DNA from: Octopus bimaculoides
Lineage: Eukaryota
NCBI RefSeq assembly: GCF_001194135.2
Contig: NC_068988.1
Coordinates: 72,453,422-72,509,786, forward strand
DNA: 56,365 nucleotides
Reading direction: 5' to 3'
In this document: positions 13,639 through 49,990 of the stretch, piece by piece
How positions within the stretch are numbered: the first letter of the stretch is position 1
Layout of the letters: each line of letters begins with the position of its first letter
Position numbers and translations under genes: made by a program
The notes under the pieces: model-generated
What the model saw: only the letters and a program-made list of their open reading frames with translations
Databases searched by the model: none
Told to the model about the DNA's origin: nothing

Positions 13639-16600
13639 ACCATCGCTTGACAACTGATGTCGGTGTGTTTACGTCTCCGTAACTTAGCGGTTCGGCAAAA
13701 GAGACCAATAGAATAAGTTCTAGGCTTCCAAAGAATAAGTCCTGGGGTCGATTTGCTCGACTAAAGGCGTTGCTCCAGCATGGCCGCAGTCAAATGACTG
13801 AAACAAGTAAAAGAGTAAAAGAGAGTATAAGAAAGGCTTACATAAATTTCGTAATGTATTTGAAAACAATGTATTAATACTTAAAATATGTTGTAACAAA
13901 ATAGTTTTATAATAGTAAATATTATAATACTTGACCTCTTTAATCATGAAATATCCTTTTGGTCGGATTATACTACTGCTTAGACATCGATTCTCAACCA
14001 GACGACGTCTAACATCGCAACGAGCATGATTAACATCATCAAATTCCTGCCAATGTCAATGTATTACATTATGTTAGAAATCAATACTGATTCGTAACGT
14101 AACAAATCTATAGTAATACCAAGTTAAAACAAATTATGGATTCGTTTACAAAAATTAATCTAGGTTTTATATAAATTTCCTCTGTTGAATATTCAGTTGA
14201 ATATTCTGTCTTGCATTATTTCATACAATTATTGGCTGTATTGAGCACCAATATCACATTGACTTAACACAGTAGGGATTTGGAAAACCAAACTAACTTT
14301 TAAATATCCATATGTTGAAAGAATTGTTGTGATTACAGAGAGATTAATACTCTTGTGGTTTTCCGATATAGAAATAAAAAGAAAATCTTCCAATATTGGT
14401 TGTTCATAACTAAATAAATCCTGTTGTATTTTCTACAAAGATTAGTTTTTAACATTAGCACATCATACATGAAGACTATAGCTGATTGAAGCGAATTCAA
14501 TGCATGGCTGTTGCATATTTAATGGATCCCCCCCGCCCAAAGAATGGAAGACAAAGTTCACTCTAATGTATTTTGGAATCAAAATGATGAGAGGCAAAAT
14601 TAAATAGTTCCACATGCTACCATTTCTGTCGCACCATTTTCTATAATCATTTAATTCCGATACTGTTTTATAAGGCCACAAATGTGTAGGATGTGAATAG
14701 CTGATTGATTCAGTATACATCAGTTTATGACCAATACTTATTTTCTCTGGAATAACAAAAGTTAAAGTTAGCCCGTGAGAAACCTAAATTTTGCTCAAAA
14801 GTGAGACAGGGTTAAATACTATTGTAAATTTGGTCCAGTGATGTACTGAGATGGCCAACTTTACAGTTCTATTTCTGAAGAAAATTTAACCCTTTTGATA
14901 CCAACCCGGCTGAAACCGCCTCTGGCTCTGTAGTACAAATGTCTTGTTTTCAAAAGTTCTGAATTAAAATCTTCCACCAAATCTTAGTTACAATTTATGT
15001 TCTTAACACTAGCTTAATGATAACTAGGGTTATTTTATTAAATTCTTTGTTATATTTAAAGTTAATTGAAAGAAACACAGCGCGTCTCAAAAGAAATATG
15101 GTAACAAAAGAGTTAAATAAAGTTATTTTATAGAATCCAAAAGTATACATGAGATGAGACTAGTACCATAACCTAAGCATTAATGAAGTGTAGCAATGAA
15201 CAAGTTTATTACATTATCTGCAATCTCAGACTGTAATATTAGTAATAATATACCTGCTGGGAGCACCAATAACAAGAGGGTGATGCCGAAATACAGCTTC
15301 CACATTTCATATGAACCTTGCAAAAGTCTGTAAAAATTAAATGGCATAATGAATTACCTTCTATAGATTTCAGTCGGTTCATAATATCTAAATACTCTCA
15401 ATTTCTCTGTGAGATATAGCGATTTTCCAAACGGTAAACTCTTATAAATTATCATTCTTTCTAATTTTCTATAAATACAGTAAGGATACGCTATAAAATT
15501 TAGTTTTTACATTTCCAGTATTTATACCTACACTCTGTTTTGATTTCTGATCACCATGGTTCTTGGTTCCAGATTGAATTGTAAATAGAGTAATATCTTC
15601 GTGAACTATAGAAGAATTACTGTGAGAAGTGAAGAATCTGGCGTTTCGGGCTGTCATCCGAAATAAAGGAAGAGAGAGGAAGATAAAGAGATACTATTGC
15701 TTGGATTGTGAACAAGAAAGTAGTGAATGATGAAGAAACTGAAGTAACGATGATTGGACGATGGTAGAATGAAATAATGCCAACAGTCAAACAATAAAAA
15801 GGTGATACTTTAGATAAGGGAATCAGCGGAGGAAACTATTAAGTAAGGGGAGAAAACAAAGAATAAACTTATCTAGAAAAGATATTTGGGAAAAGAAGCG
15901 CCAAAGAAATCCTGCTTATAACAGAGCTTACGTAAGTTTATCGACTGAAATGTTAACATCTCTTTCTCACCAGTAGCATAGCCTCCCTAAGTATCTCATA
16001 CCTAATACTGACTCTCACATCAACCACTTCTCCGAAATAGTGAAATAGAAGTCGTGATAGAGAATGTGAGTTGGTTTCTGGCTGGTGAGTGTATCATCAG
16101 GTATGCCTGTCGTATCACCGCCTAAAATATTTTCCTCCATGTTATTTGACGTTAACATGTCAGCTAATCTTCATGATCAACAACAGTCACTCAACCTACT
16201 CATCAAAGATGGAAAATCTTTATATCACATCCTAACGACTTAACTAAAGAATATATTTGAAAATGTATTTTCTTATATGAAAATGACGTATATTGTTAGT
16301 ACGTCCACTGTCTGGAGTTAAATGTCATGAGTTAGCGAGTTATCAATGTTTTGGCCACAATTTATGTCAATCAAGACATAATCTCTCCACAACAGAGGAG
16401 CTGAAGCGAGATACTTCAACAAGATATGAACTGCTGGATCCTTGGACGATATGATAACTGAATCTTTGTTCAGTACGCAACGGAATGATGATTAAAACTG
16501 CTAGAAGTAGGAAAGAGGAAACGGAAAGATATCAAAGAAAAGCTAATGCCCGAGATTCCAGAGATGAAGAATATGAATGTTGCTATATTTTTAGAAATAC

Positions 16601-17376
16601 GCATCAAAGTCATAAGTGCATAATTAAGTGTATCTTCTTACATATTCAATTATCAAATATAATGCTGTTTTGTGTTTTATAACTTAATGTTTGTAGAATG
16701 ACAAACGTAAGTTTACTAACCTGATGTTTCTGAATTCATATAATTACTAATGTTTTCATCAAAAGTTTCTTCAATTGTACTTGAAAAATCTGAAAAAGAA
16801 ATCGCAGATTATATATGATCTGTAAATAACTATGTACACGAAAATTATACAAATATACTTAACAAGCATATCTTTAGTTTCGCTTTGAAAATATATAGAG
16901 TATATAGAAGTCACAGGAACTTCAGCAGGAAAACATGATGATCATCGCCTTTCATTAAAGATTCGTCGGGGATCGCTTACTTTGGTTTCTGTCTGATGAG
17001 GTTAAGAGGAGATCTTGTGAATAATATAAGCAAACTAATACTGGAGCAAAGAAATTCACATAATGGCTAATGCCCAGGATTTCATACCAAAAGTGCAAAT
17101 ACAAAGGAAGGGAAGCGATCGCTGATGAATTTTTTATGAAACGCGAACAAGTCAGAATGATCCATCTTACTGTCTGCTGAAGACCGAGCAGGTTATCTTT
17201 GAGTATATTTTCACGGCGAAAGTAAATATATGATTATTAAATTTATATAAGCAATTCTTCATAACCTGACTATGTTAGTACTTTTGTCATTACATAATCT
17301 GTAGAAGTTAACAGAAACAGAGAGGCGAGAACAGAGGAAATATTTTGGAGTATTCGTGATGATTATCCTCATCAAC

Positions 17377-17442
<66 letters not shown>

Positions 17443-17522
17443 ATCACTGCCGGGTAAACGGCGTAGTGGTTAAGAGCGCGGGCTACTAACCCCAAGATTC
17501 CAGGGTCGATTCCAGGTAGTGA

Positions 17523-17576
<54 letters not shown>

Positions 17577-18841
17577 CAACAACATCGAAAATACCTTAGG
17601 AATGAGAACCCATGTTCGAAATTTCCCCAATACACCTGATGAAGGCTGGAGGGCATATCAGCCGAAACGTTGTGTTAACAACAAACAAGATGAGGACAAT
17701 TATCTGTCAAATGTAAATAATGTAAATAATGTACATAATTCCTCATCTCTTAAATATAGAACTGTATTATCTAATACTTTCCTGATTATTCTGGCCGTGC
17801 CTAGGAGGAAAACCTTTTGTAACAGTTCTACTGGGCAATCTATATTATTATTATTATTATTCAGTATTGATGGGTAAGGGCTTTGTCAACATTGGCATTA
17901 TTAAGTTCTCTTTGGGTATTTGCTATTGAGAGGTTTTTCTTGCCATTTATCAGTAAGAGTATCTAAGGCAGCAGTTCTAGAACAGGTTTTCATACGCTTA
18001 GCTTTTTCTCTGCTTGTTTCTAATGTCTAATTCTGGAATTTGTTGTATTTGGAATTCACTTATATATTCCTTTGCCTGTTTTGTTATTGAGTATGATGCT
18101 TTCTTGTTTTCATGTTTTGAGACAAGTTTTAATATCTAGTCCTCAGAGTTTTTCAGGTAGGTGTCTAGGCCAATTGCGGCAATCTTCATTGTTAATTCCA
18201 GTTGTAAAAGTCCACGACCTCCCTCTTTTCTTGGCAAATAAAGTCGTTCTATATCTGCCTTTGTGTGATGCATTCTGTGCATTGTCAACAATTTTCGTAT
18301 TTTTCAGTCAAGATTACGTATTTCAGTAATTGACCAGTTAATGATATTGCCTTCCCCTTTTTGTTCATTACCTTTTCCGGTGTATGTTGGTACCTAGCAC
18401 CCGTAACCTCATATCCATACTTATGGCATAGTAGCCTCATATCCATACTTATGGCAATGTAGCCCCAAAAAGTGGAGGTTTGGGGCTATAATTGTTGTGT
18501 CTACGTTTGTACTGTTTCTGCGCAAGACATTCACAAGCACTAACAATGTGAGTCATGCTTTCGACCCTCTTTCCACACATTCTACAGAGGTCCGTTGCGC
18601 TTGTGTGGTATATATTCTTTTATTATTAACGCAGCGAGCAGGCAGAATAGTTAGCACACCGGGCAAAATGCTTAGCGGCATTTCTTCCGTCTTTACGTTC
18701 TAGATTCAAAATTCCGCCGCGATCGACTTTGCCTTTCATCCTTTTGAGGTCGATAAATTAAGTACCAGTTGAGCACTGGGGTCGATATAATCGACTTAAT
18801 CCCGCCTAAAAGTTTCAGGCCTTGTGCCTATAGTAGAAAGG

Positions 18842-18913
<72 letters not shown>

Positions 18914-19207
18914 TCTCTTTATCACAGATTTTGTTGGAGCTCCTGGAGTCTAACATGCGTAGCGAGCTTGTACCTGCAGCCTACGGTACCATGCTATCCA
19001 TTCTTTTCAACTATCTAATACTTTCCTGATTATTCTGGCCATGCCAAGGAGGCAAACCTTTTGTAACAGTTCTACTGGGCACTCTATTCCAACTTCCTTT
19101 ATATTCCCCTTGATGCCTTCTGATACTGTTCCCAAGAAACCAACAATAATTGATACTATCTTTACCTTCTTTATTTTCCATAATCGGGCTATTTCCTACT
19201 TAAGAGG

Positions 19208-19266
<59 letters not shown>

Positions 19267-21373
19267 GCTGAACTGTGAACCACAGTTTTATTATCAATGC
19301 GTACATTTGTCACATTTGTTCTCAGTCTTTCTCAATGCTATATCGTCTAATGAAGTCGATCATCGTTATTTAGTGATGGTGTTCGGTTAAAGAGTTTTGT
19401 TCACGTTTTCTGAAGCTATATGGCTTCAGTGTATTGACGTATCTGCTCCGTATTGAACGAACTAAATGGCCATCGTTGCTTTGGAGATTCACTTGAATAC
19501 AGGAATATGGGAAAGCAGTATCAGTTGACAAAGACGGTGTCAGCAAAATAGAGCCGGAAACTACAGAAATCGAAGTAGTTAGTACTTAATGAATCAAGAG
19601 CAGACTGAACACCTAGCATCTGGAAATTCTACCCAGGCCTCATACTTCTCAGTCACTTTGGTAATATAGCTAGTTGTACGTCAACTACATTTTCATCTAG
19701 CCATCTTCTTTACTGATATTCATAGTGACTGAACCATAGACTTAGAGGTAACAACAACAAAGACGTTCTCGGGGCAAATCCGTACGTCTATAAATGTTAA
19801 CTGAACAGTCTATTCCGAAGGCTGTAGATAACTTCCCACATTCTTGGTCTTGCAAAAATAGTAATACTGCTTCGGAATAACCTTTACAAGTATGGTGGTT
19901 TTATCAGCTAGGCCGGCGGGAGATGAAAGCAGAACAACGAAACTTTTCTGCACACAATCATTTAGTGTTCAAACATCACTGAATTGTGGAGTTATATTGA
20001 GTTATATTATAATTGTGCGGAAGACGAATATGGTTCTCGGCCGTTTCTGAAGAGAATCAATAAAGTGAAGTACCAATAAAGTACTGTGGTTGATATTATC
20101 GACTTTGCTCCTCACCCATATTTTTGGCTTTGTGCCTCTGTATGAAGCTGATTTGTTTACAAAAATAGGTTTTATGGCCTGTTAAAGACGTCTGATTCAC
20201 TCTCCAAAGACCCGTTCGCAAAATATTGGTTGGTAAAAATGTTTTGTATGAATCTGAAGAAAAAGATATTTTAAGACTATTCTGCCTGCAAAAGAAAATT
20301 TCTCATTAAATCTCACCAGCTGAAAACAATTCAGTGCACCAGGTTTTACAATTGTTAAAAATTGTCCTTAAACGAATACTTGAAAAAGACAAATATTAGC
20401 AAGTTTTTGAATCGATTAAATCAGTCATATTGTTTAAGAAACGAAGAAAAATCATGAAAAATTTCCCTTCCTTAGGGAATCATATACTCCTGCAGATAAT
20501 AGCTTTTGTTTTAAAACTGAACTGTGTATCGTCACTTTTTCTACACCTTTTCCCTCCTAAAACGGGACTTCTGTAAATGTAATTCTGATCCCTTTTTTGT
20601 CTCAAGGTCAAGCATTTTTCTGAACTTTTAACTTCTGATTCAATACTTTCTAAACAATTCCACTAATAATTCCGGAAGCTAATAAAAGCAAATGTCTTTT
20701 GGATTAATCTGTATAATTTTTATGTAAATTATCTAATTATGCTGTTGCATTCTTGATACATTTATATTTGTCACTTATGAAGCACAGACTGTCTGAAATA
20801 AGTTGTAATACAACACCAGCATGAAAAAAAAAGATAGTCTGATGTTTTTCACTGCTTTCTACTCATTCTTAAGCTGCTGCCACTTATTGCAAGTTTCAGG
20901 TCCATGCCAATAGTTGATTTAATTGTTTCAATATTTGAGATTTCGATGTCTAAAGATAACGTTGACAGTCGAATATATATAATCTTACACTCGTTGTTAT
21001 CTACTTAAATAATTCACACTGTCAAAGTACTTAGTCTTTCATTTCGAGTACTTCCACGATGATATATGTATATATGTAACCATTTCATACAGAACAACAA
21101 TAGAAATTAATCCTTTCTACTTACATTCTGAGGTCGGGTGAATTTTGTTATCCATGAATGCCCCGAACCATTGTGTTCCTGCTGTTAAAGTAAATTAAAA
21201 CAAATATGTATCAAAGAGAACATCACACACAGGCATATATATAAACACATACACACACGTTCCTAGTTACTCTTAATTAAAATAATTCATGTTGTTTTGT
21301 TTTCATTTTTCTGTGCAAACTTCAGAATTTTTTTCCTGAATCAGTATCTCTAAAATAATTTTAATTACCAACT

Positions 21374-21437
<64 letters not shown>

Positions 21438-23329
21438 GTGCGCGCGCGCGCCTGCCTGCCTGCCTGCGTGCGCGCGTATGTCATTTATATACTCTCCAAG
21501 ACTGGTAAATCAGAGTTTCACCAAATAGTTACAGAATTTTCCTACGAGAATTCTACGATTTCCGAAGTGTTTACTTCCTGCTATGTGTAATGTAAGTTAC
21601 GAGATTTCATTTGCTTATGAGGTTGTGCCAGATTCTGGAGCTAATTTCTATTATTAGGGGTCAACATTATATTGAACAGCACTTAATGCTGTCCAATATA
21701 ATGTTCTTTGTCGTTGTCTTTCCTTGCACTGTTTATGAACGGATTGCTGCGTTACAGTATTTTTCATTATATTTCCATGTTGTGACATTTTCTTTCAGCT
21801 GCTAGTTGGCTATGATTTTCTTATTGATTTGCCTAAAAGAAGTAATGTGGTTAATGTATAATTCCTTGAACTTGCTCTCTGCCATTCTTATGCAATGTTC
21901 ATAACGATTTGTTAGTTAGACAATGGAAAATTCGACAAAGATGCCATTGTTCGGCTGTGGTGAGGGTAAGAGTTGGCCGTAATCCGATCTTTTATCAGTG
22001 TCCACATGTGTCTGTACGTATGTATATGTATAAAAGGTTGGATTACAACCACCTCATGCGCTAACTACATATAGCCCATCAATGATGCCCCTTTGCCCTG
22101 CATTTATCTAACTACTCACATGTACATACATACATGCTTTTTGGGGTAAACGAAACTACAAATACCACCATATAAAAGTAGATTTATAGCAGAGGCTACT
22201 TGGAGTACGAATAAAGGAATAGTTATTTTCGTTAATGGTGCATTGAATTTTGCTCGATATTGTAATTCCATTTACTGGAATCCTAGTGTTAGTTTGATGT
22301 TCAGTAAAAGGTCTAGCTCGAAATTTATTATACAAGTATGTAACAGTTTGGTTATGCGAATGGTTATACAGGGTTTTAAAATGAGTTGAGAAATTTAAGG
22401 GTAATCTAGACATACATAATTATATTTTGAGTAAATCTGGAAAGATTTCTCCTTTTCAGCTCGAAGATGAATTGAAAGTTTAAAATGATAAAAGATCGTT
22501 GGTGGTTCCCTTAATTATAATCCGGTTAAAAGTATTAAGCTTTTATATTCCCAGTCAGCGTTAGATTATATGTTCCTAAGGTTATTTGATACTGACCGAA
22601 GGAGTAATCTCGCCTATGTGTTCGAAACCGGGTTGATATCCGTTAGACAGCTGAAGAAGGAATTCCTGGTTTTCTTCAGTTTATTCCTTATCTAAATATG
22701 TTTCTAAGTATATATGATAGAGTGAATACTATATATTGGTAGGTATGGCTGCTTACATGCTTATAAACTTTAATAATGGAGTTTGTTATTTGTTTGTGAT
22801 GTTTATCTGTACACTGATTTTAGTGTGACAGAGGCTCTTAGACATTTGATTCTGGAAATTTTAGAAGTTCTTGATTGATTCCATGTCCATTTTGGATTGT
22901 ACTGCTGTCAGCTTATTTCAATTGATGAAGACAGATTTTAAGTTAGAGGCATGACTTAACCTGGATATTTAACGATATAGAGCAGTGAATGTGTGTGTGG
23001 AGGGGCGTGTTTGCGTTTATGCGTGTATATGTGTATGTATTATGTATGTATAAAGTTTTTTTGTTTGCTTTTATTATTCAATGACTAAATATTTTTCAGT
23101 TCTTCGAATCTTCTCGGGTTGTCACAGTGAATACTCGAAAACAATTGGAATTAGAAAATAAAATTTTGGCACATATTTGCTACACTATGCATCTAAAATA
23201 GTCTGTCATGTGTCCATTTTAGGTATTATCATATCAAAAGAACTTACATGGAAACGTGGTTTCATTCGCATACACCGTGTCAGATATACCTGTACCTGTG
23301 AAAACAAACATCACAAATCAACGTTTCTT

Positions 23330-23413
<84 letters not shown>

Positions 23414-26400
23414 GGGAGAATTAATGAATTTTGGAAGATAAATGAAATAGGTTTTGTTAAGTAAAAATACTCGTTAAATTCATGTTGCCATGTAGAGAAA
23501 AGCAATAGGATTCTTTCTCTACATATTGATGTAATTTATATTAGCGAAATGCCATATAGACTATGAGAAGGGCGTAAGACAATTGAAATAACTGCAGTAT
23601 ACGCTCATCATTATTTTGTCGTCGTCGCTGAGGTATGTGAAGTCGAATTATAAATGAATATAGGAAAGGGTTTTGTCTCGTCCTCAATCATTACAAGCAA
23701 TTCATCTCCTTTAGCTGTGATAATTTCTTGTAGAGTCACAATATTCCTGGGAGAGTTTAGTCGGTAAAACCTAACTCAGTACTTGGTTGGTACTTAGACC
23801 AAGTCGCAATCAGATTTGTACTCAGTACTGTAACTAAGTTCTATACTCTGCCGTCTTTAACATCCATAAGTTTTAGCTATTATAGAATACTGGGCAGATC
23901 TTAATTTGACAGTTCATGAAATTTTCTCCTTTTTAATGTATCAGATAAGAAAGACGAAACGTCTATCACTTTAAACATAAATGACAATAATTATAGTATT
24001 ATTTTCACTTACTTCCACTGAACTCAGCTTTGGTATTTTTCAGAGACATCGTTGTTAATTCGATTGTTGCTAAATTAATTTTAAAATATATATAGAAGCA
24101 TTAATGTTCATAGTTGCATGTGTATACAAATGCATTGCATATTGATGCATATATAAAGACAATATTACCGGTTTCGATGTTTCTAATCTTATCAAATATC
24201 AGTAAAAATTTATAAAAATTTGAAGTAAAAACATTTTATCTACTGTCTGGTGGGTGGTCAAGCATGAAGAAAGACGTAAAGTATTAGGGATGGAAAGAGA
24301 GAGAGAGAAAAAGTAGGAGGAAGGCAAAAGTGAGGCAAAAAAAGAGAAAGAAACATATATAGATGTCGTACAAAATATATTCGAAGAATATTTTATATAT
24401 ATGTATCTATATATATAACAGAGAGGATGTGTGTGTGTGTGTGTGTGTACGTGAATGTAGTTTATGCACGTCCACAAATTAGCACGCATGTCGCTCCAAT
24501 TTTAGGAGGTGATGTGTCATGACATTATGTGCATTTTCGCCAAATATTTCTCTCAGAGGCACCCGCGTATAGCTGTAAAAATCGATAAACTATTACCAAT
24601 TTTGAAGTTTGATGATATGGCGAAGTCAAATCTGTGCGTACGCGCGTGAAGGAGAGAGACAGACAGACAGAGAGACAGACAGACAGAGAGATAGATAAAG
24701 AAAGAAAGAAATAGTGTGTTTGTGACAGGGGGGAATACAGAGTGTTTGCTAGCGTCCAAAAACAAAATTTAAAAAGTGGGTAAGGCAGACAGAAATCAAA
24801 GCAAATTTTTCTAAGCAAGACAGAGTTTACTTTGCTAGCGTCTAACAAAAAAAAAAGAACGAATAAGTGGAAGAGGGAGGCAGAGAGCGTATTAGGAATG
24901 AAAATGTAGTTAAGGAAGACAGTAAGTGTAAAATGTAAAAGGCATTTTTTTTCTTAAACATGAGATGTAGTTTAAAATATACGATGTTTTTGAAAGACAC
25001 TATATTCTATAATGAGATTATATATACTTTCTCACACAACAATTCAAATATATTTATTTTAAATCATTTATTTGTTTTAAATCGTTCATCTTTCTCCCCC
25101 CCTCTCACTCTCACACACACGCACATATACAACTTTGGGGGCGAAAGAGTTTTGTTTATATTTCACAACTATGAAGCAAAAACGTATGTAATAATTTGTC
25201 AGTCACCCCCACCCAACCCGTTTTTCGGACCACAAAAAGGGTCTTGTAATTTTTCAGATTAACAACCGCACGATTTCCACTAGGGTGTTACGGTTAGGGT
25301 TTTAGGGTTAGGGTTAGAGTTTTACGGTTAGGATTAGGGTTAGGGTTAAGGTTAGTGTTAGGATTACGATTAGGGTTGGTGTTAGGGTTACGGTTTTAGG
25401 GTCAGGGTTAGGGTTACGGTTTAGGGTTAGGGTTAGAGTTAACCTAGAAGGGACAGGCCCCTTATTTTTTGGTTAAGGCTGTTGGTAAGTTTTCCTAAGT
25501 TACTCCAATCCACATCCCCAATGCAAACCTTCAGATCAACCTTTTCCTATGCAGATCTCTAATGCAACTTTAAAAAAACAGTCAATGAGTGGAAATAACC
25601 AATAAACTGATTCCTTATGGGATTTCCCAATCAAATTGCCAGCAAACCATTTTCAGCCAAACCAATTTCAACGGATTTCGCTCAAATCTGATGTCCATGT
25701 TACTTATTTTGGTTTGAAATAAAGCACTTGATCACTTAATAATCCTAGCTTAATCCCGAGCAGCGCCGGGCTATACTGCTAGTTTAAAAAAAAAACAAGA
25801 TACATGGATCATTCGCAGCCGATTTCCTCACCGGTCGGAATCCGGAAAGTCCTTGTAGTTTCGCACCCATTATCTCTGAGACTACTGGAATATATAATGC
25901 TATATATATTCAATGTAAACTTGCACAGTTAATAAAACATAAACTTGGAAGTAAAACAAGTCATCTGCTAAAAAAATAACAAATATATACAATAACTGAA
26001 TTCATTGTGTATGTGTGACTTGTGTGCATACGTGCGTGTGTGTATGTGTGTGAGTGTTTGAGAGTATTGTATATGAGTGTGTTTAAACTTCGAAATCCCT
26101 GTAGTTTATTATAGTAGTACAAGAACTACATTCGTACACTATAATTTGTGAAGTTTGCTGCATCCTTCGTCGATTTCGACGATAGGCCTTATGTTGTTGA
26201 ATCAACTGAATTTCTACACCCAAAATAGATATGTAATAAGCTGAGTGTACTCATAATGCAATTTTTATGTAGAAACTGCGTGACACCAAAACGAGACGAG
26301 ATATTTGGACAAAAAGACAGAGAATGGACAAAAGGGAAAGAGAAAAGAATTGAGTCCAATACGGGACTGGTAATTCATTTATCGACCCCGCAAGGACGAA

Positions 26401-26475
26401 AGTGGAAATTAATACCGTGAATTTGAACTGTAAGCCATTCTCTTCCACACACAAGCAACTCTGCCACCTAGCTAT

Positions 26476-26515
<40 letters not shown>

Positions 26516-27013
26516 GTTTACACTAATACTTCCGTATACGTTACTTGCTGTTCTGCTTACCATAACGATCAATATTATGTGAGATTAGACTGTCATTGAA
26601 TTTAACAAATTACTTTCAACTTTTCTTCATCAGAATAAAGAGAAAGAAATTAAAATTGAATGAAGAAGTAATTAAAATCATCTAAAGCCAAGAAAAAGAT
26701 GATTGTTTAGTCAAAGGTTAATGTGGTTTCTATTGAAGATAGAGAAAACGTAACTTACGTTGATATGTCGAATTTTCTTTGACTGAAACAGATACAACTA
26801 CTGGCTCAGAAGTTACTTTATCTGTAAAATAATTACATGGAAATTATGAAAATGACAATAAAGATAACTAGAAAGACAACGTGACTACAATTTCTGAAAA
26901 CCTGATAATCCAAGGCAATAGGTGAATAAAATTGTTTCTTTGCAAGTTGTCTCGAAAGTTGTCTCTGAACACTATGTTCATGAGTGTGTATATGTATCAA
27001 TGAGTGTGTGTGT

Positions 27014-27079
<66 letters not shown>

Positions 27080-27772
27080 NNNNNNNNNNNNNNNNNNNNN
27101 NNNNNNNNNNNNNNNNNNNNNNNNNNNNNNNNNNNNNNNNNNNNNNNNNNNNNNNNNNNNNNNNNNNNNNNNNNNNNNNNNNNNNNNNNNNNNNNNNNNN
27201 NNNNNNNNNNNNNNNNNNNNNNNNNNNNNNNNNNNNNNNNNNNNNNNNNNNNNNNNNNNNNNNNNNNNNNNNNNNNNNNNNNNNNNNNNNNNNNNNNNNN
27301 NNNNNNNNNNNNNNNNNNNNNNNNNNNNNNNNNNNNNNNNNNNNNNNNNNNNNNNNNNNNNNNNNNNNNNNNNNNNNNNNNNNNNNNNNNNNNNNNNNNN
27401 NNNNNNNNNNNNNNNNNNNNNNNNNNNNNNNNNNNNNNNNNNNNNNNNNNNNNNNNNNNNNNNNNNNNNNNNNNNNNNNNNNNNNNNNNNNNNNNNNNNN
27501 NNNNNNNNNNNNNNNNNNNNNNNNNNNNNNNNNNNNNNNNNNNNNNNNNNNNNNNNNNNNNNNNNNNNNNNNNNNNNNNNNNNNNNNNNNNNNNNNNNNN
27601 NNNNNNNNNNNNNNNNNNNNNNNNNNNNNNNNNNNNNNNNNNNNNNNNNNNNNNNNNNNNNNNNNNNNNNNNNNNNNNNNNNNNNNNNNNNNNNNNNNNN
27701 NNNNNNNNNNNNNNNNNNNNNNNNNNNNNNNNNNNNNNNNNNNNNNNNNNNNNNNNNNNNNNNNNNNNNNNN

Positions 27773-27831
<59 letters not shown>

Positions 27832-49990: not shown

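What the first reader, a model, noticed from the sequence alone, without database searches (positions are those of the whole stretch)
15254..49990. Integrin beta with a ~250-290 aa mucin-like N-terminal extension ahead of the PSI domain
Seen: a signal-peptide exon (49930-49990, phase 1) lies about 35 kb upstream of the PSI exon (15254-15327, phase 1). Between them are at least nine AG/GT-bounded, open, phase 1-1 exons; most have GTAAGT donors. They splice without a stop and encode an S/T/P/E-rich chain with several N-glycosylation sequons (NSS, NST, NET, NFS, NIS). Established: in the integrin betas I know, the PSI domain follows the signal peptide within a few residues. Inference: this beta chain carries a glycosylated mucin-like arm attached at the PSI/knee, which could shield ligand access, act as an anti-adhesive or lectin-binding element, or affect bending. 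I know of no description of this architecture but cannot search.
Basis: partly seen in the sequence, partly recalled or inferred. Interest (0 to 1): 0.85.

Follow-up and report, generated by a model that had tools for sequence, protein, structure and literature searches.

The report
Integrin beta gene with extra N-terminal exons
Between the signal-peptide exon and the first domain exon of an animal integrin beta gene lies a chain of short, frame-compatible exons that would add an acidic, serine/threonine-rich arm of about 250 residues to the receptor's N-terminus; sequence statistics support the exons, but no transcript or ortholog data could be reached.

Summary
On the minus strand, a signal-peptide exon (49990-49930) and the integrin PSI exon (15327-15254) both sit at phase 1. 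All nine are open, have lengths divisible by 3, and splice into a stop-free 249-aa insert.

This is more than chance. Seven of the nine internal GTAAGT sites on this strand close an open phase 1-1 exon with a pyrimidine-rich acceptor. The other strand gives 1 of 10, and 300 Markov simulations gave a mean of 0.76 and a maximum of 4. The eight small exons share an unusual composition (S+T 0.32 against 0.15 for random open windows). Exon 2 is an 18-nt, six-codon minisatellite that is open only in the claimed frame. No exon spans an assembly gap, and six of them share a gap-free block with the PSI exon.

Three things are not shown: that the exons are spliced into integrin mRNA, that they are constitutive, and that the arm is glycosylated. 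The signal-peptide exon can also splice directly to the PSI exon in frame, giving a canonical integrin beta. The likeliest reading is therefore a set of symmetric cassette exons, as in CD45. Three exons (17040, 24069, 21181) are weak. The protein databases at hand hold no animal integrins, and no publication describing this architecture was found.

The parts
49930..49990 (-). First coding exon: ATG plus a hydrophobic signal-peptide-like segment MLKLVFSLLLIIKTMHSFTS, donor CAG|gtaagt, phase 0->1
   Evidence: It is the best of all ATG/hydrophobic/phase-1-donor candidates upstream of the PSI exon (KD 3.32).
38673..38969 (-). Extension exon 2 (297 nt, phase 1-1). It encodes TITSGANSSISPLETDEPAETAEPVETVKP…(VQTVEP)n…EKTSISQ; acceptor tttcaaag, donor AAC|gtaagt
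   Evidence: Only this frame is open; the other five frames have 4-14 stops. Exon GC is 0.40 against 0.26 in the flanks.
38691..38927 (-). 18-nt (six-codon) tandem repeat inside exon 2: 13.2 copies, 79% matches, with five identical core copies GTT CAA ACA GTT GAA CCA (VQTVEP)
34964..35002 (-). Extension exon 3 (39 nt, phase 1-1): TSSEVEDKQIST; acceptor ttattttaacag, donor gtaagt
   Evidence: best-scoring acceptor for this donor.
33538..33594 (-). Extension exon 4 (57 nt, phase 1-1): PSESEVISTTSKQSSIYL; acceptor tttctatttctttag, donor gtaagt
26759..26821 (-). Extension exon 5 (63 nt, phase 1-1): KVTSEPVVVSVSVKENSTYQ; acceptor attattttacag, donor gtaagt
24013..24069 (-). Extension exon 6 (57 nt, phase 1-1): TIELTTMSLKNTKAEFSG; donor gtaagt, but a poor A-rich acceptor tract (aaaattaatttag). 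Weaker member.
   Evidence: It fails the py>=7/12 filter.
23248..23295 (-). Extension exon 7 (48 nt, phase 1-1): TGISDTVYANETTFP; acceptor tgtttgttttcacag, donor gtaagt
   Evidence: Exon GC is 0.44 against 0.23 in the flanks.
21125..21181 (-). Extension exon 8 (57 nt, phase 1-1): GTQWFGAFMDNKIHPTSE; tandem NAGNAG acceptor (aacagcag), donor gtaagt. Not S/T-rich, so a weaker member by composition.
16981..17040 (-). Extension exon 9 (60 nt, phase 1-1): LVCLYYSQDLLLTSSDRNQ; strong acceptor, donor gtaagc. Hydrophobic, with an unpaired Cys. The least convincing member.
16721..16789 (-). Extension exon 10 (69 nt, phase 1-1): FSSTIEETFDENISNYMNSETS; acceptor tttctttttcag, donor CAG|gttagt
15254..15327 (-). 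PSI-domain exon of integrin beta (phase 1->0): (D)FCKVHMKCGSCISASPSCYWCSQQ
   Evidence: (PF17205 2.6e-10).
13936..14046 (-). Second PSI/hybrid exon: EFDDVNHARCDVRRRLVENRCLSSSIIRPKGYFMIKE
10344..10475 (-). Start of the betaI (VWA) domain: GENQNFPFELRMSTDYPLDVYFVMDCSVTMKGHRKNLASVTQEL. The 5' boundary is uncertain.
   Evidence: (PF00362 3.6e-35).
5190..5277 (-). betaI exon: AKSLGKISKNFLVGFGTFVDRAELPFTHD
2957..3043 (-). betaI exon: TEMNKDIIGRSEDEPEAGLDAVLQAILCR, donor gtaagt
2073..2156 (-). betaI exon: DIIGWRKYSRKLLLLFSDAFVHFAGDGK. The gene continues beyond the window's left end.

Best explanation
The 34.6-kb interval between the signal-peptide exon and the PSI exon of this integrin beta gene is not a plain first intron. 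It carries a chain of short, symmetric (phase 1-1) coding exons on the gene's strand. Spliced in, they place an acidic, Ser/Thr/Glu/Val-rich, low-complexity segment of up to about 250 aa between the signal peptide and the PSI domain. That segment includes a six-residue VQTVEP-type tandem repeat.

Every one of these exons is symmetric, and the signal-peptide exon can also join the PSI exon directly in frame. The most likely mode of use is therefore as cassette exons. Isoforms would range from a canonical, arm-less beta chain to one with a long N-terminal arm, in the manner of the variable O-glycosylated N-terminus of CD45.

Shown: the exons exist as sequence features far beyond chance; they are frame-compatible with both ends; they share a composition.

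Inferred: they are included in integrin mRNA; the arm is disordered and glycosylated; and, sitting at the PSI/knee, it acts as a steric and charge spacer that modulates access, clustering or the bent-to-extended equilibrium.
For: 1. Enrichment of exon-like units. In 15328-49929 on the minus strand there are nine internal GTAAGT sites. Seven close an open, length-divisible-by-3, phase 1-1 unit behind an acceptor with >=8/12 pyrimidines. Every other phase class on this strand has 0-3, and the plus strand has 1 of 10. In 300 second-order Markov simulations of the same strand the mean was 0.76 and the maximum 4. The largest count for any phase class in any simulation was 6.
2. Composition. The eight small exons pool to S+T 0.32, against 0.154 for 1742 random open windows from the region (0 of 20000 resamples reach it). 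D+E is 0.14 against 0.06.
3. Exon 2. It is open for 98 codons only in the claimed frame; the other five frames have 4-14 stops. Its repeat period is 18 nt, which is six codons.
4. All junctions join without a stop.
5. Seven of nine mini-exons have the full U1-complementary donor GTAAGT, against 2 of 7 for the gene's ordinary exons. That is the expected compensation for very short exons.
6. No other signal-peptide-like first exon with a phase-1 donor lies between 16720 and 15328, and none as good lies anywhere upstream.
7. No transmembrane-like exon was found that would let the mini-exons form a separate membrane mucin gene.
8. The exons are single-copy in the window and do not lie inside dispersed repeats.
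9. Most have higher GC than their flanks, as the PSI exon does.
10. Six extension exons and the PSI exon lie in one gap-free block.
Against: - There is no transcript, ortholog or cross-species conservation evidence of any kind. The protein collections searched hold no animal integrins, and the exon-2 ORF is not on record.
- Direct splicing of the signal-peptide exon to the PSI exon is in frame and gives the canonical architecture.
- Individual exons are weak: 17040 (hydrophobic, free Cys, gtaagc donor), 24069 (poor acceptor tract), 21181 (W/F-rich) and 16789 (gttagt donor, GC below its flanks).
- A comparable phase 1-1 pseudo-exon (9413-9381) occurs in a betaI-domain intron, where an insert would be disruptive. 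False positives therefore do occur.
- The 46967-46887 unit counted in the statistics is probably also chance.
- The exons show no sign of arising by duplication of one another.
- The signal-peptide exon and exons 2-4 are joined to the rest only through scaffold gaps.
Confidence: 0.55

Rival explanations
1. This is a canonical integrin beta. The signal-peptide exon splices directly to the PSI exon across a 34.6-kb first intron, and the mini-exons are pseudo-exons: chance or decayed sequence, or rarely used non-productive exons that contribute nothing to the protein.
For: - The direct junction is in frame (G+AC=Asp; …HSFTSDFCKVHMKCGSC) and places the first PSI cysteine a few residues from the predicted mature N-terminus, as in human beta1.
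- Long first introns after signal-peptide exons are common (general knowledge).
- Some exons look poor.
- A similar pseudo-exon exists at 9413-9381.
- No publication describing such an arm was found.
Against: - Seven of nine GTAAGT sites give phase 1-1 open units, against 0.76 expected.
- The shared S/T/acidic composition is not reached in 20000 resamples.
- Exon 2 has a 98-codon frame open only in the right phase.
- Non-coding decoy exons would not need to be open or divisible by 3.
Confidence: 0.2
2. There are two genes. The signal-peptide exon and the S/T-rich exons belong to a separate secreted or mucin-like gene lying upstream of, or overlapping, the integrin gene. The integrin's own first exon was not recognised: it may be weakly hydrophobic, hidden, or upstream of the window.
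For: - Small secreted S/T-rich proteins built from phase 1-1 exons are common (general knowledge).
- The three exons nearest the PSI domain differ in character from the upstream ones. The true gene boundary could therefore lie between them.
- An in-frame ATG at 15382 lets the PSI exon be read as MNRLKSIEGNSLCHLIFTDFCK… without any upstream exon.
Against: - No signal-peptide-like exon with a phase-1 donor lies in the gap-free 11.6 kb upstream of the PSI exon. The only marginal one is 22171-22120, MVVFVVSFTPKSMYVCT.
- The 15382 start has no signal peptide, which an integrin beta requires.
- No transmembrane-like or obvious terminal exon was found.
- Every mini-exon leaves the frame in exactly the phase that the PSI acceptor needs.
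Confidence: 0.15
3. This is an assembly artefact. The scaffold wrongly joins contigs, so the signal-peptide exon and exons 2-4 come from another locus.
For: - Seven N runs (10-693 N) lie between 49930 and 26821: six between 27080 and 44099, plus a 10-N run at 49338-49347.
- Most gaps abut microsatellites, which typically break short-read assemblies.
Against: - All exons are on one strand, in one order and in one phase.
- Six extension exons plus the PSI exon are in one gap-free block, so the core of the finding does not depend on scaffolding.
- The 34-N gap at 39462 is flanked on both sides by the same octamer inside a dispersed repeat, so it looks like an unmerged overlap.
Confidence: 0.05

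Closest known systems
Canonical integrin beta subunits (vertebrate beta1/beta3, insect betaPS)
   Same: PSI domain with the C…CxxC…C.WC motif, followed by hybrid and betaI (VWA) domain exons. Best PDB match is human beta1 at 6.6e-33. A signal-peptide exon ends in phase 1, followed by a phase-1 PSI exon.
   Different: In solved beta1 the first PSI cysteine is about residue 7 of the mature chain. Here up to 249 residues of low-complexity sequence may intervene. The ADMIDAS Asp-Asp is replaced by Gly-His, and the second MIDAS Ser by Thr (alignment).
CD45 (PTPRC) variable N-terminus, exons 4-6/7 (A, B, C)
   Same: An N-terminal region of about 200 aa, Ser/Thr-rich and O-glycosylated, directly after the signal peptide and ahead of the folded ectodomain. 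It is encoded by small cassette exons whose inclusion sets the length (PMC8380896). The gene layout here is the same: a signal-peptide exon, then symmetric S/T-rich exons, then the first folded domain.
   Different: A different protein family. Alternative splicing and glycosylation are documented for CD45 and untested here. The arm here is more acidic and Val-rich, and less Pro-rich.
Mucin-domain adhesion molecules (MAdCAM-1, PSGL-1, GPIb-alpha)
   Same: A low-complexity Ser/Thr-rich segment with tandem repeats attached to an adhesion receptor. For MAdCAM-1 the mucin-like domain modulates integrin-mediated adhesion through charge repulsion (PMC7767916, abstract).
   Different: In those molecules the mucin segment is a membrane-proximal stalk or lies on the ligand. 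It is not at the N-terminus of the integrin itself. S+T (29%) and P (7%) here are below typical mucin domains.

Membership tests
Integrin beta subunit | N-terminal PSI domain with the conserved cysteine pattern | tested here: met
   PF17205 PSI_integrin, E 2.6e-10, covering 3-46 of 47 profile positions. It aligns to the beta1 PSI domain.
Integrin beta subunit | betaI (VWA) domain with MIDAS DxSxS, E220-equivalent and D251-equivalent | tested here: inconclusive
   PF00362 matches at 3.6e-35. The motif is D-C-S-V-T (second Ser -> Thr). EDEPEAG keeps the Asp, Pro and Glu, and SDAFVHFAGDGK keeps the Asp. The ADMIDAS DD is replaced by GH. Only part of the domain lies in the window.
Integrin beta subunit | Hybrid domain flanking the betaI domain | tested here: inconclusive
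   About 25-30 residues between GYFMIKE and GENQNF are unplaced. The exon is unresolved between 13936 and 10475, a stretch that holds two N runs.
Integrin beta subunit | Four I-EGF repeats, beta-tail domain, transmembrane helix, cytoplasmic NPxY motifs | not testable with these tools
   The gene runs off the left end of the window after exon 2156-2073.
Integrin beta subunit | Cleavable signal peptide | tested here: inconclusive
   MLKLVFSLLLIIKTMHSFTS has a 9-residue hydrophobic core and is the best candidate upstream. No SignalP-type predictor was available, and the -3/-1 positions are not classic.
Mucin-like (O-glycosylated, PTS-type) domain | High Ser+Thr+Pro content | tested here: inconclusive
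   S+T is 72/249 (29%) and P is 17/249 (7%), 36% together. That is twice the local random level but below classic mucin domains.
Mucin-like (O-glycosylated, PTS-type) domain | Tandem repeats in the coding sequence | tested here: met
   18-nt period, 13.2 copies, in frame, within exon 2 only.
Mucin-like (O-glycosylated, PTS-type) domain | Dense O-glycosylation | not testable with these tools
   No glycosylation predictor or experimental data were available.
CD45-type variable N-terminal cassette-exon array | Symmetric exons between the signal-peptide exon and the first folded domain, each removable without a frameshift | tested here: met
   All nine exons are phase 1-1. Direct splicing of the signal-peptide exon to the PSI exon is also in frame.
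CD45-type variable N-terminal cassette-exon array | Documented alternative inclusion of the exons | not testable with these tools
   No transcript data could be reached.

The most novel reading that the evidence does not exclude
An integrin beta subunit carries, on its PSI domain at the knee, a cassette-spliced, glycosylated, acidic arm of variable length (0 to about 250 aa). This would be a built-in piece of glycocalyx that sterically and electrostatically tunes ligand access, clustering or the bent-to-extended equilibrium of the receptor. It would be analogous to CD45 isoforms and has not been described for any integrin.
Probability: 0.35. Interest if true: 0.75.

Novelty: new variant of a known kind. 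Interest (0 to 1): 0.55.

Why it matters
Integrin beta chains are among the most conserved metazoan receptors, and their N-terminus is taken to be the PSI domain itself. The PSI/knee region changes exposure on activation: a tag inserted in the beta7 PSI domain becomes antibody-accessible in a Mn2+-dependent way (PMC7413538, abstract). Bulky glycocalyx is known, from my own knowledge of the literature, to influence integrin clustering and activation. A beta chain with its own variable-length glycosylated arm would be a natural experiment in cis-acting steric regulation of an integrin. It would also be a new example of exon insertion into the phase-1 intron after a signal peptide. If it is instead a prediction artefact, it is a useful warning for annotating long first introns in AT-rich, gap-ridden assemblies.

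Tried and rejected
- Ortholog or transcript evidence through the protein collection. The query of signal peptide + arm + PSI gave only low-complexity bacterial hits. The PSI->betaI query gave no hit at all. The collection therefore holds no animal integrins, and I did not spend the third search or the representative-library job.
- Exact look-up of the exon-2 ORF: not on record.
- Literature: searches on integrin beta, octopus, cephalopod, mollusc, mucin-like and N-terminal extension, plus literal peptide strings, found no description. One query was rejected for syntax.
- Rfam: no RNA family anywhere in the window.
- Exon duplication: pairwise alignment of the mini-exons with flanks gave scores of 27 or less, which does not exceed the null 99th percentile. 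The only shared strings are splice consensus and a 9-mer. Rejected.
- Recursive-splicing (ratchet) exons. These need a 5' splice site re-formed at the exon start. Only 2 of the 9 exons start with GT and none resembles GTRAGT. Rejected.
- Alternative signal-peptide exon near the PSI exon: none.
- Transmembrane exon for a separate mucin gene: only microsatellite translations.
- A generic acceptor weight matrix ranked the true acceptor of a known exon only third, so I did not use it for inference.
- Pfam on intronic ORFs gave only a sub-threshold reverse-transcriptase hit.
Full report
**What is there**

The window is AT-rich (36% GC), with 16 N runs. Its minus strand carries the 5' half of an integrin beta gene.

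- The PSI exon is 15327-15254 and encodes (D)FCKVHMKCGSCISASPSCYWCSQQ.
- It is followed by exons at 14046-13936, 10475-10344, 5277-5190, 3043-2957 and 2156-2073.
- Joined, these match Pfam PSI_integrin (2.6e-10) and Integrin_beta (3.6e-35).
- They also match solved human beta1, beta3, beta2, beta6 and beta8 chains; the best is beta1 at 6.6e-33.
- The gene leaves the window at its left end.

**Signal-peptide exon**

It runs from the ATG at 49990 and encodes MLKLVFSLLLIIKTMHSFTS, with donor CAG|gtaagt at 49930, phase 1. I scanned every ATG upstream of the PSI exon for a hydrophobic stretch and a phase-1 donor. This exon is clearly the best candidate. None exists in the 1.4 kb between the last mini-exon and the PSI exon.

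**The nine intermediate exons**

Each exon ends at a GT donor, has a length divisible by 3, and is open in phase 1. Seven donors are GTAAGT. The eleven exons concatenate to 882 nt without a stop, giving a 249-aa insert.

**Assembly gaps**

No exon touches an N run. The frame is carried by splicing, so it does not depend on continuity across gaps.

- From 26821 down to 15254 there is no gap, so six extension exons and the PSI exon are physically linked.
- The signal-peptide exon and exons 2-4 are linked only through scaffolding.
- The gaps could also hide further exons.
- The 34-N gap at 39462-39495 has the same octamer on both sides inside a dispersed repeat. It looks like an unmerged overlap.

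**Is it more than chance?**

- Splice-site test. On the minus strand between the two end exons there are nine internal GTAAGT sites. Seven of them close an open phase 1-1 unit behind an acceptor with at least 8 of 12 pyrimidines. Every other phase class on the same strand has 0-3, and the plus strand has one such unit among ten GTAAGT sites.
- Simulation. In 300 second-order Markov simulations trained on this strand, the phase 1-1 count averaged 0.76 and never exceeded 4. The largest count in any phase class was 6.
- Composition. The eight small exons pool to S+T 0.32, against 0.154 for 1742 random open windows from the region. None of 20000 resampled sets reached that value. D+E is 0.14 against 0.06.
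- Exon 2. It is open for 98 codons only in the claimed frame; the other five frames have 4-14 stops. It is built on an 18-nt, six-codon repeat with 13.2 copies at 79% matches and five identical VQTVEP core units.
- Repeats and GC. The exons are single-copy in the window and do not lie in dispersed repeats. Most are GC-richer than their flanks, as the PSI exon is.
- Donor strength. The mini-exons have stronger donors (7 of 9 GTAAGT) than the gene's ordinary exons (2 of 7). Very short exons are expected to need this.

**Limits of that evidence**

- One of the seven counted units (46967-46887, acceptor gaag, not S/T-rich) is probably chance.
- A similar unit (9413-9381) sits in a betaI-domain intron, where an insert would be harmful. 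False positives therefore occur at roughly one per 20-30 kb.
- Exon 24069 has a poor acceptor tract.
- Exon 17040 encodes LVCLYYSQDLLL with a free cysteine.
- Exon 21181 is W/F-rich.
- Exon 16789 has a gttagt donor and low GC.
- The exons are not detectably duplicates of one another.

**What could not be tested**

The two protein searches returned no animal integrin at all, so no ortholog or transcript-derived protein could be examined. The exact look-up of the exon-2 ORF found nothing. I could not verify the species.

**Interpretation**

The signal-peptide exon ends in phase 1 and the PSI exon begins in phase 1. Direct splicing therefore gives …HSFTS-D-FCKVHMKCGSC…, a canonical integrin beta N-terminus. 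In beta1 the first PSI cysteine is about residue 7 of the mature chain. Every intermediate exon is symmetric, so any subset can be included without a frameshift.

The best-supported reading is a cassette-exon array. It would add a variable, acidic, Ser/Thr-rich and probably disordered and glycosylated arm ahead of the PSI domain. The closest known gene architecture is the variable N-terminus of CD45, about 200 aa of S/T-rich, O-glycosylated sequence encoded by alternatively spliced exons 4-6/7 (PMC8380896).

Any function is inferred. The PSI/knee region changes exposure with integrin activation (PMC7413538, abstract). A bulky charged arm there could bias bending, access or clustering.

I rejected recursive-splice exons because the exon starts do not re-form a donor. 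I also rejected a separate membrane mucin gene, because no transmembrane or alternative signal-peptide exon was found.

**Comparison and novelty**

Membership in the integrin beta family is met for the PSI and betaI domains. It is untestable for the C-terminal half. 'Mucin-like' is only partly met: S+T+P is 36%, and tandem repeats occur in exon 2 only. Literature searches found no integrin beta with an N-terminal low-complexity arm, though the library is incomplete. If real, this is a new variant of a known kind.

**Verdict**

- Observation: confirmed.
- Interpretation: partly supported.
- Confidence that at least some of these exons enter integrin mRNA: about 0.55.
- Interest: 0.55.

Noticed in passing
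window 10344-10475 (-) and 2957-3043 (-): The betaI metal-binding motifs are divergent. DLSYSMKDD of beta1 reads DCSVTMKGH here: the second MIDAS Ser is Thr, and both ADMIDAS Asp residues are replaced by Gly-His. SGNLDSPEGG reads GRSEDEPEAG. From memory, vertebrate beta8 also lacks ADMIDAS ligands. This beta chain may be regulated atypically.
   Followed up: partly
window 13936-10475 (-): About 25-30 residues of the hybrid domain (between GYFMIKE and GENQNF) have no identified exon. The phases do not match: exon 14046-13936 ends in phase 0 and exon 10475 starts in phase 1. The frame upstream of 10475 stays open (…IKIFDTFTKCFDFMIFKGENQ) and resembles the missing beta-strand. The 3' end of exon 14046-13936 (TTTCATGATTAAAGAG) nearly repeats the sequence just upstream of 10475 (TTTCATGATTTTTAAAGGAG). 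Two N runs lie in this interval.
   Followed up: partly
window 9381-9413 (-): A 33-nt phase 1-1 open unit with acceptor tatatccag and donor CTT|gtaagt lies in the phase-1 intron inside the betaI domain. It is probably a pseudo-exon, and I used it as a false-positive control.
   Followed up: partly
It lies 0.7 kb downstream of the signal-peptide exon.
   Followed up: no
window 21178-21181 (-): A tandem NAGNAG acceptor (aacag|cag|GAA) at extension exon 8. Both choices keep the frame and differ by one residue.
   Followed up: no
window 15382 (-): An in-frame ATG 55 nt upstream of the PSI exon lets the exon be read as MNRLKSIEGNSLCHLIFTDFCK… without any upstream exon. An automatic annotation could start the protein here, but it has no signal peptide.
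   Followed up: partly
window 3970-4230, 12857-12997, 13375-13520, 39496-39626, 42676-42849, 44273-44362, 45162-45325: Seven copies (74-84% identity, both orientations) of a dispersed SINE-like element of about 150-170 nt, often next to microsatellites and assembly gaps.
   Followed up: partly
window 28436-31270 (+) and 39805-40206 (+): Antisense ORF fragments that look like a decayed LINE. There is a sub-threshold reverse-transcriptase match (PF00078, E 0.006) at 29528-29938. The minus-strand ORFs at 47601-48311 look transposase-like by eye but have no Pfam hit.
   Followed up: partly
window 39462-39495: A 34-N gap flanked on both sides by the same octamer gtttctgt inside the SINE-like element. 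It is probably an unmerged overlap rather than missing sequence.
   Followed up: no
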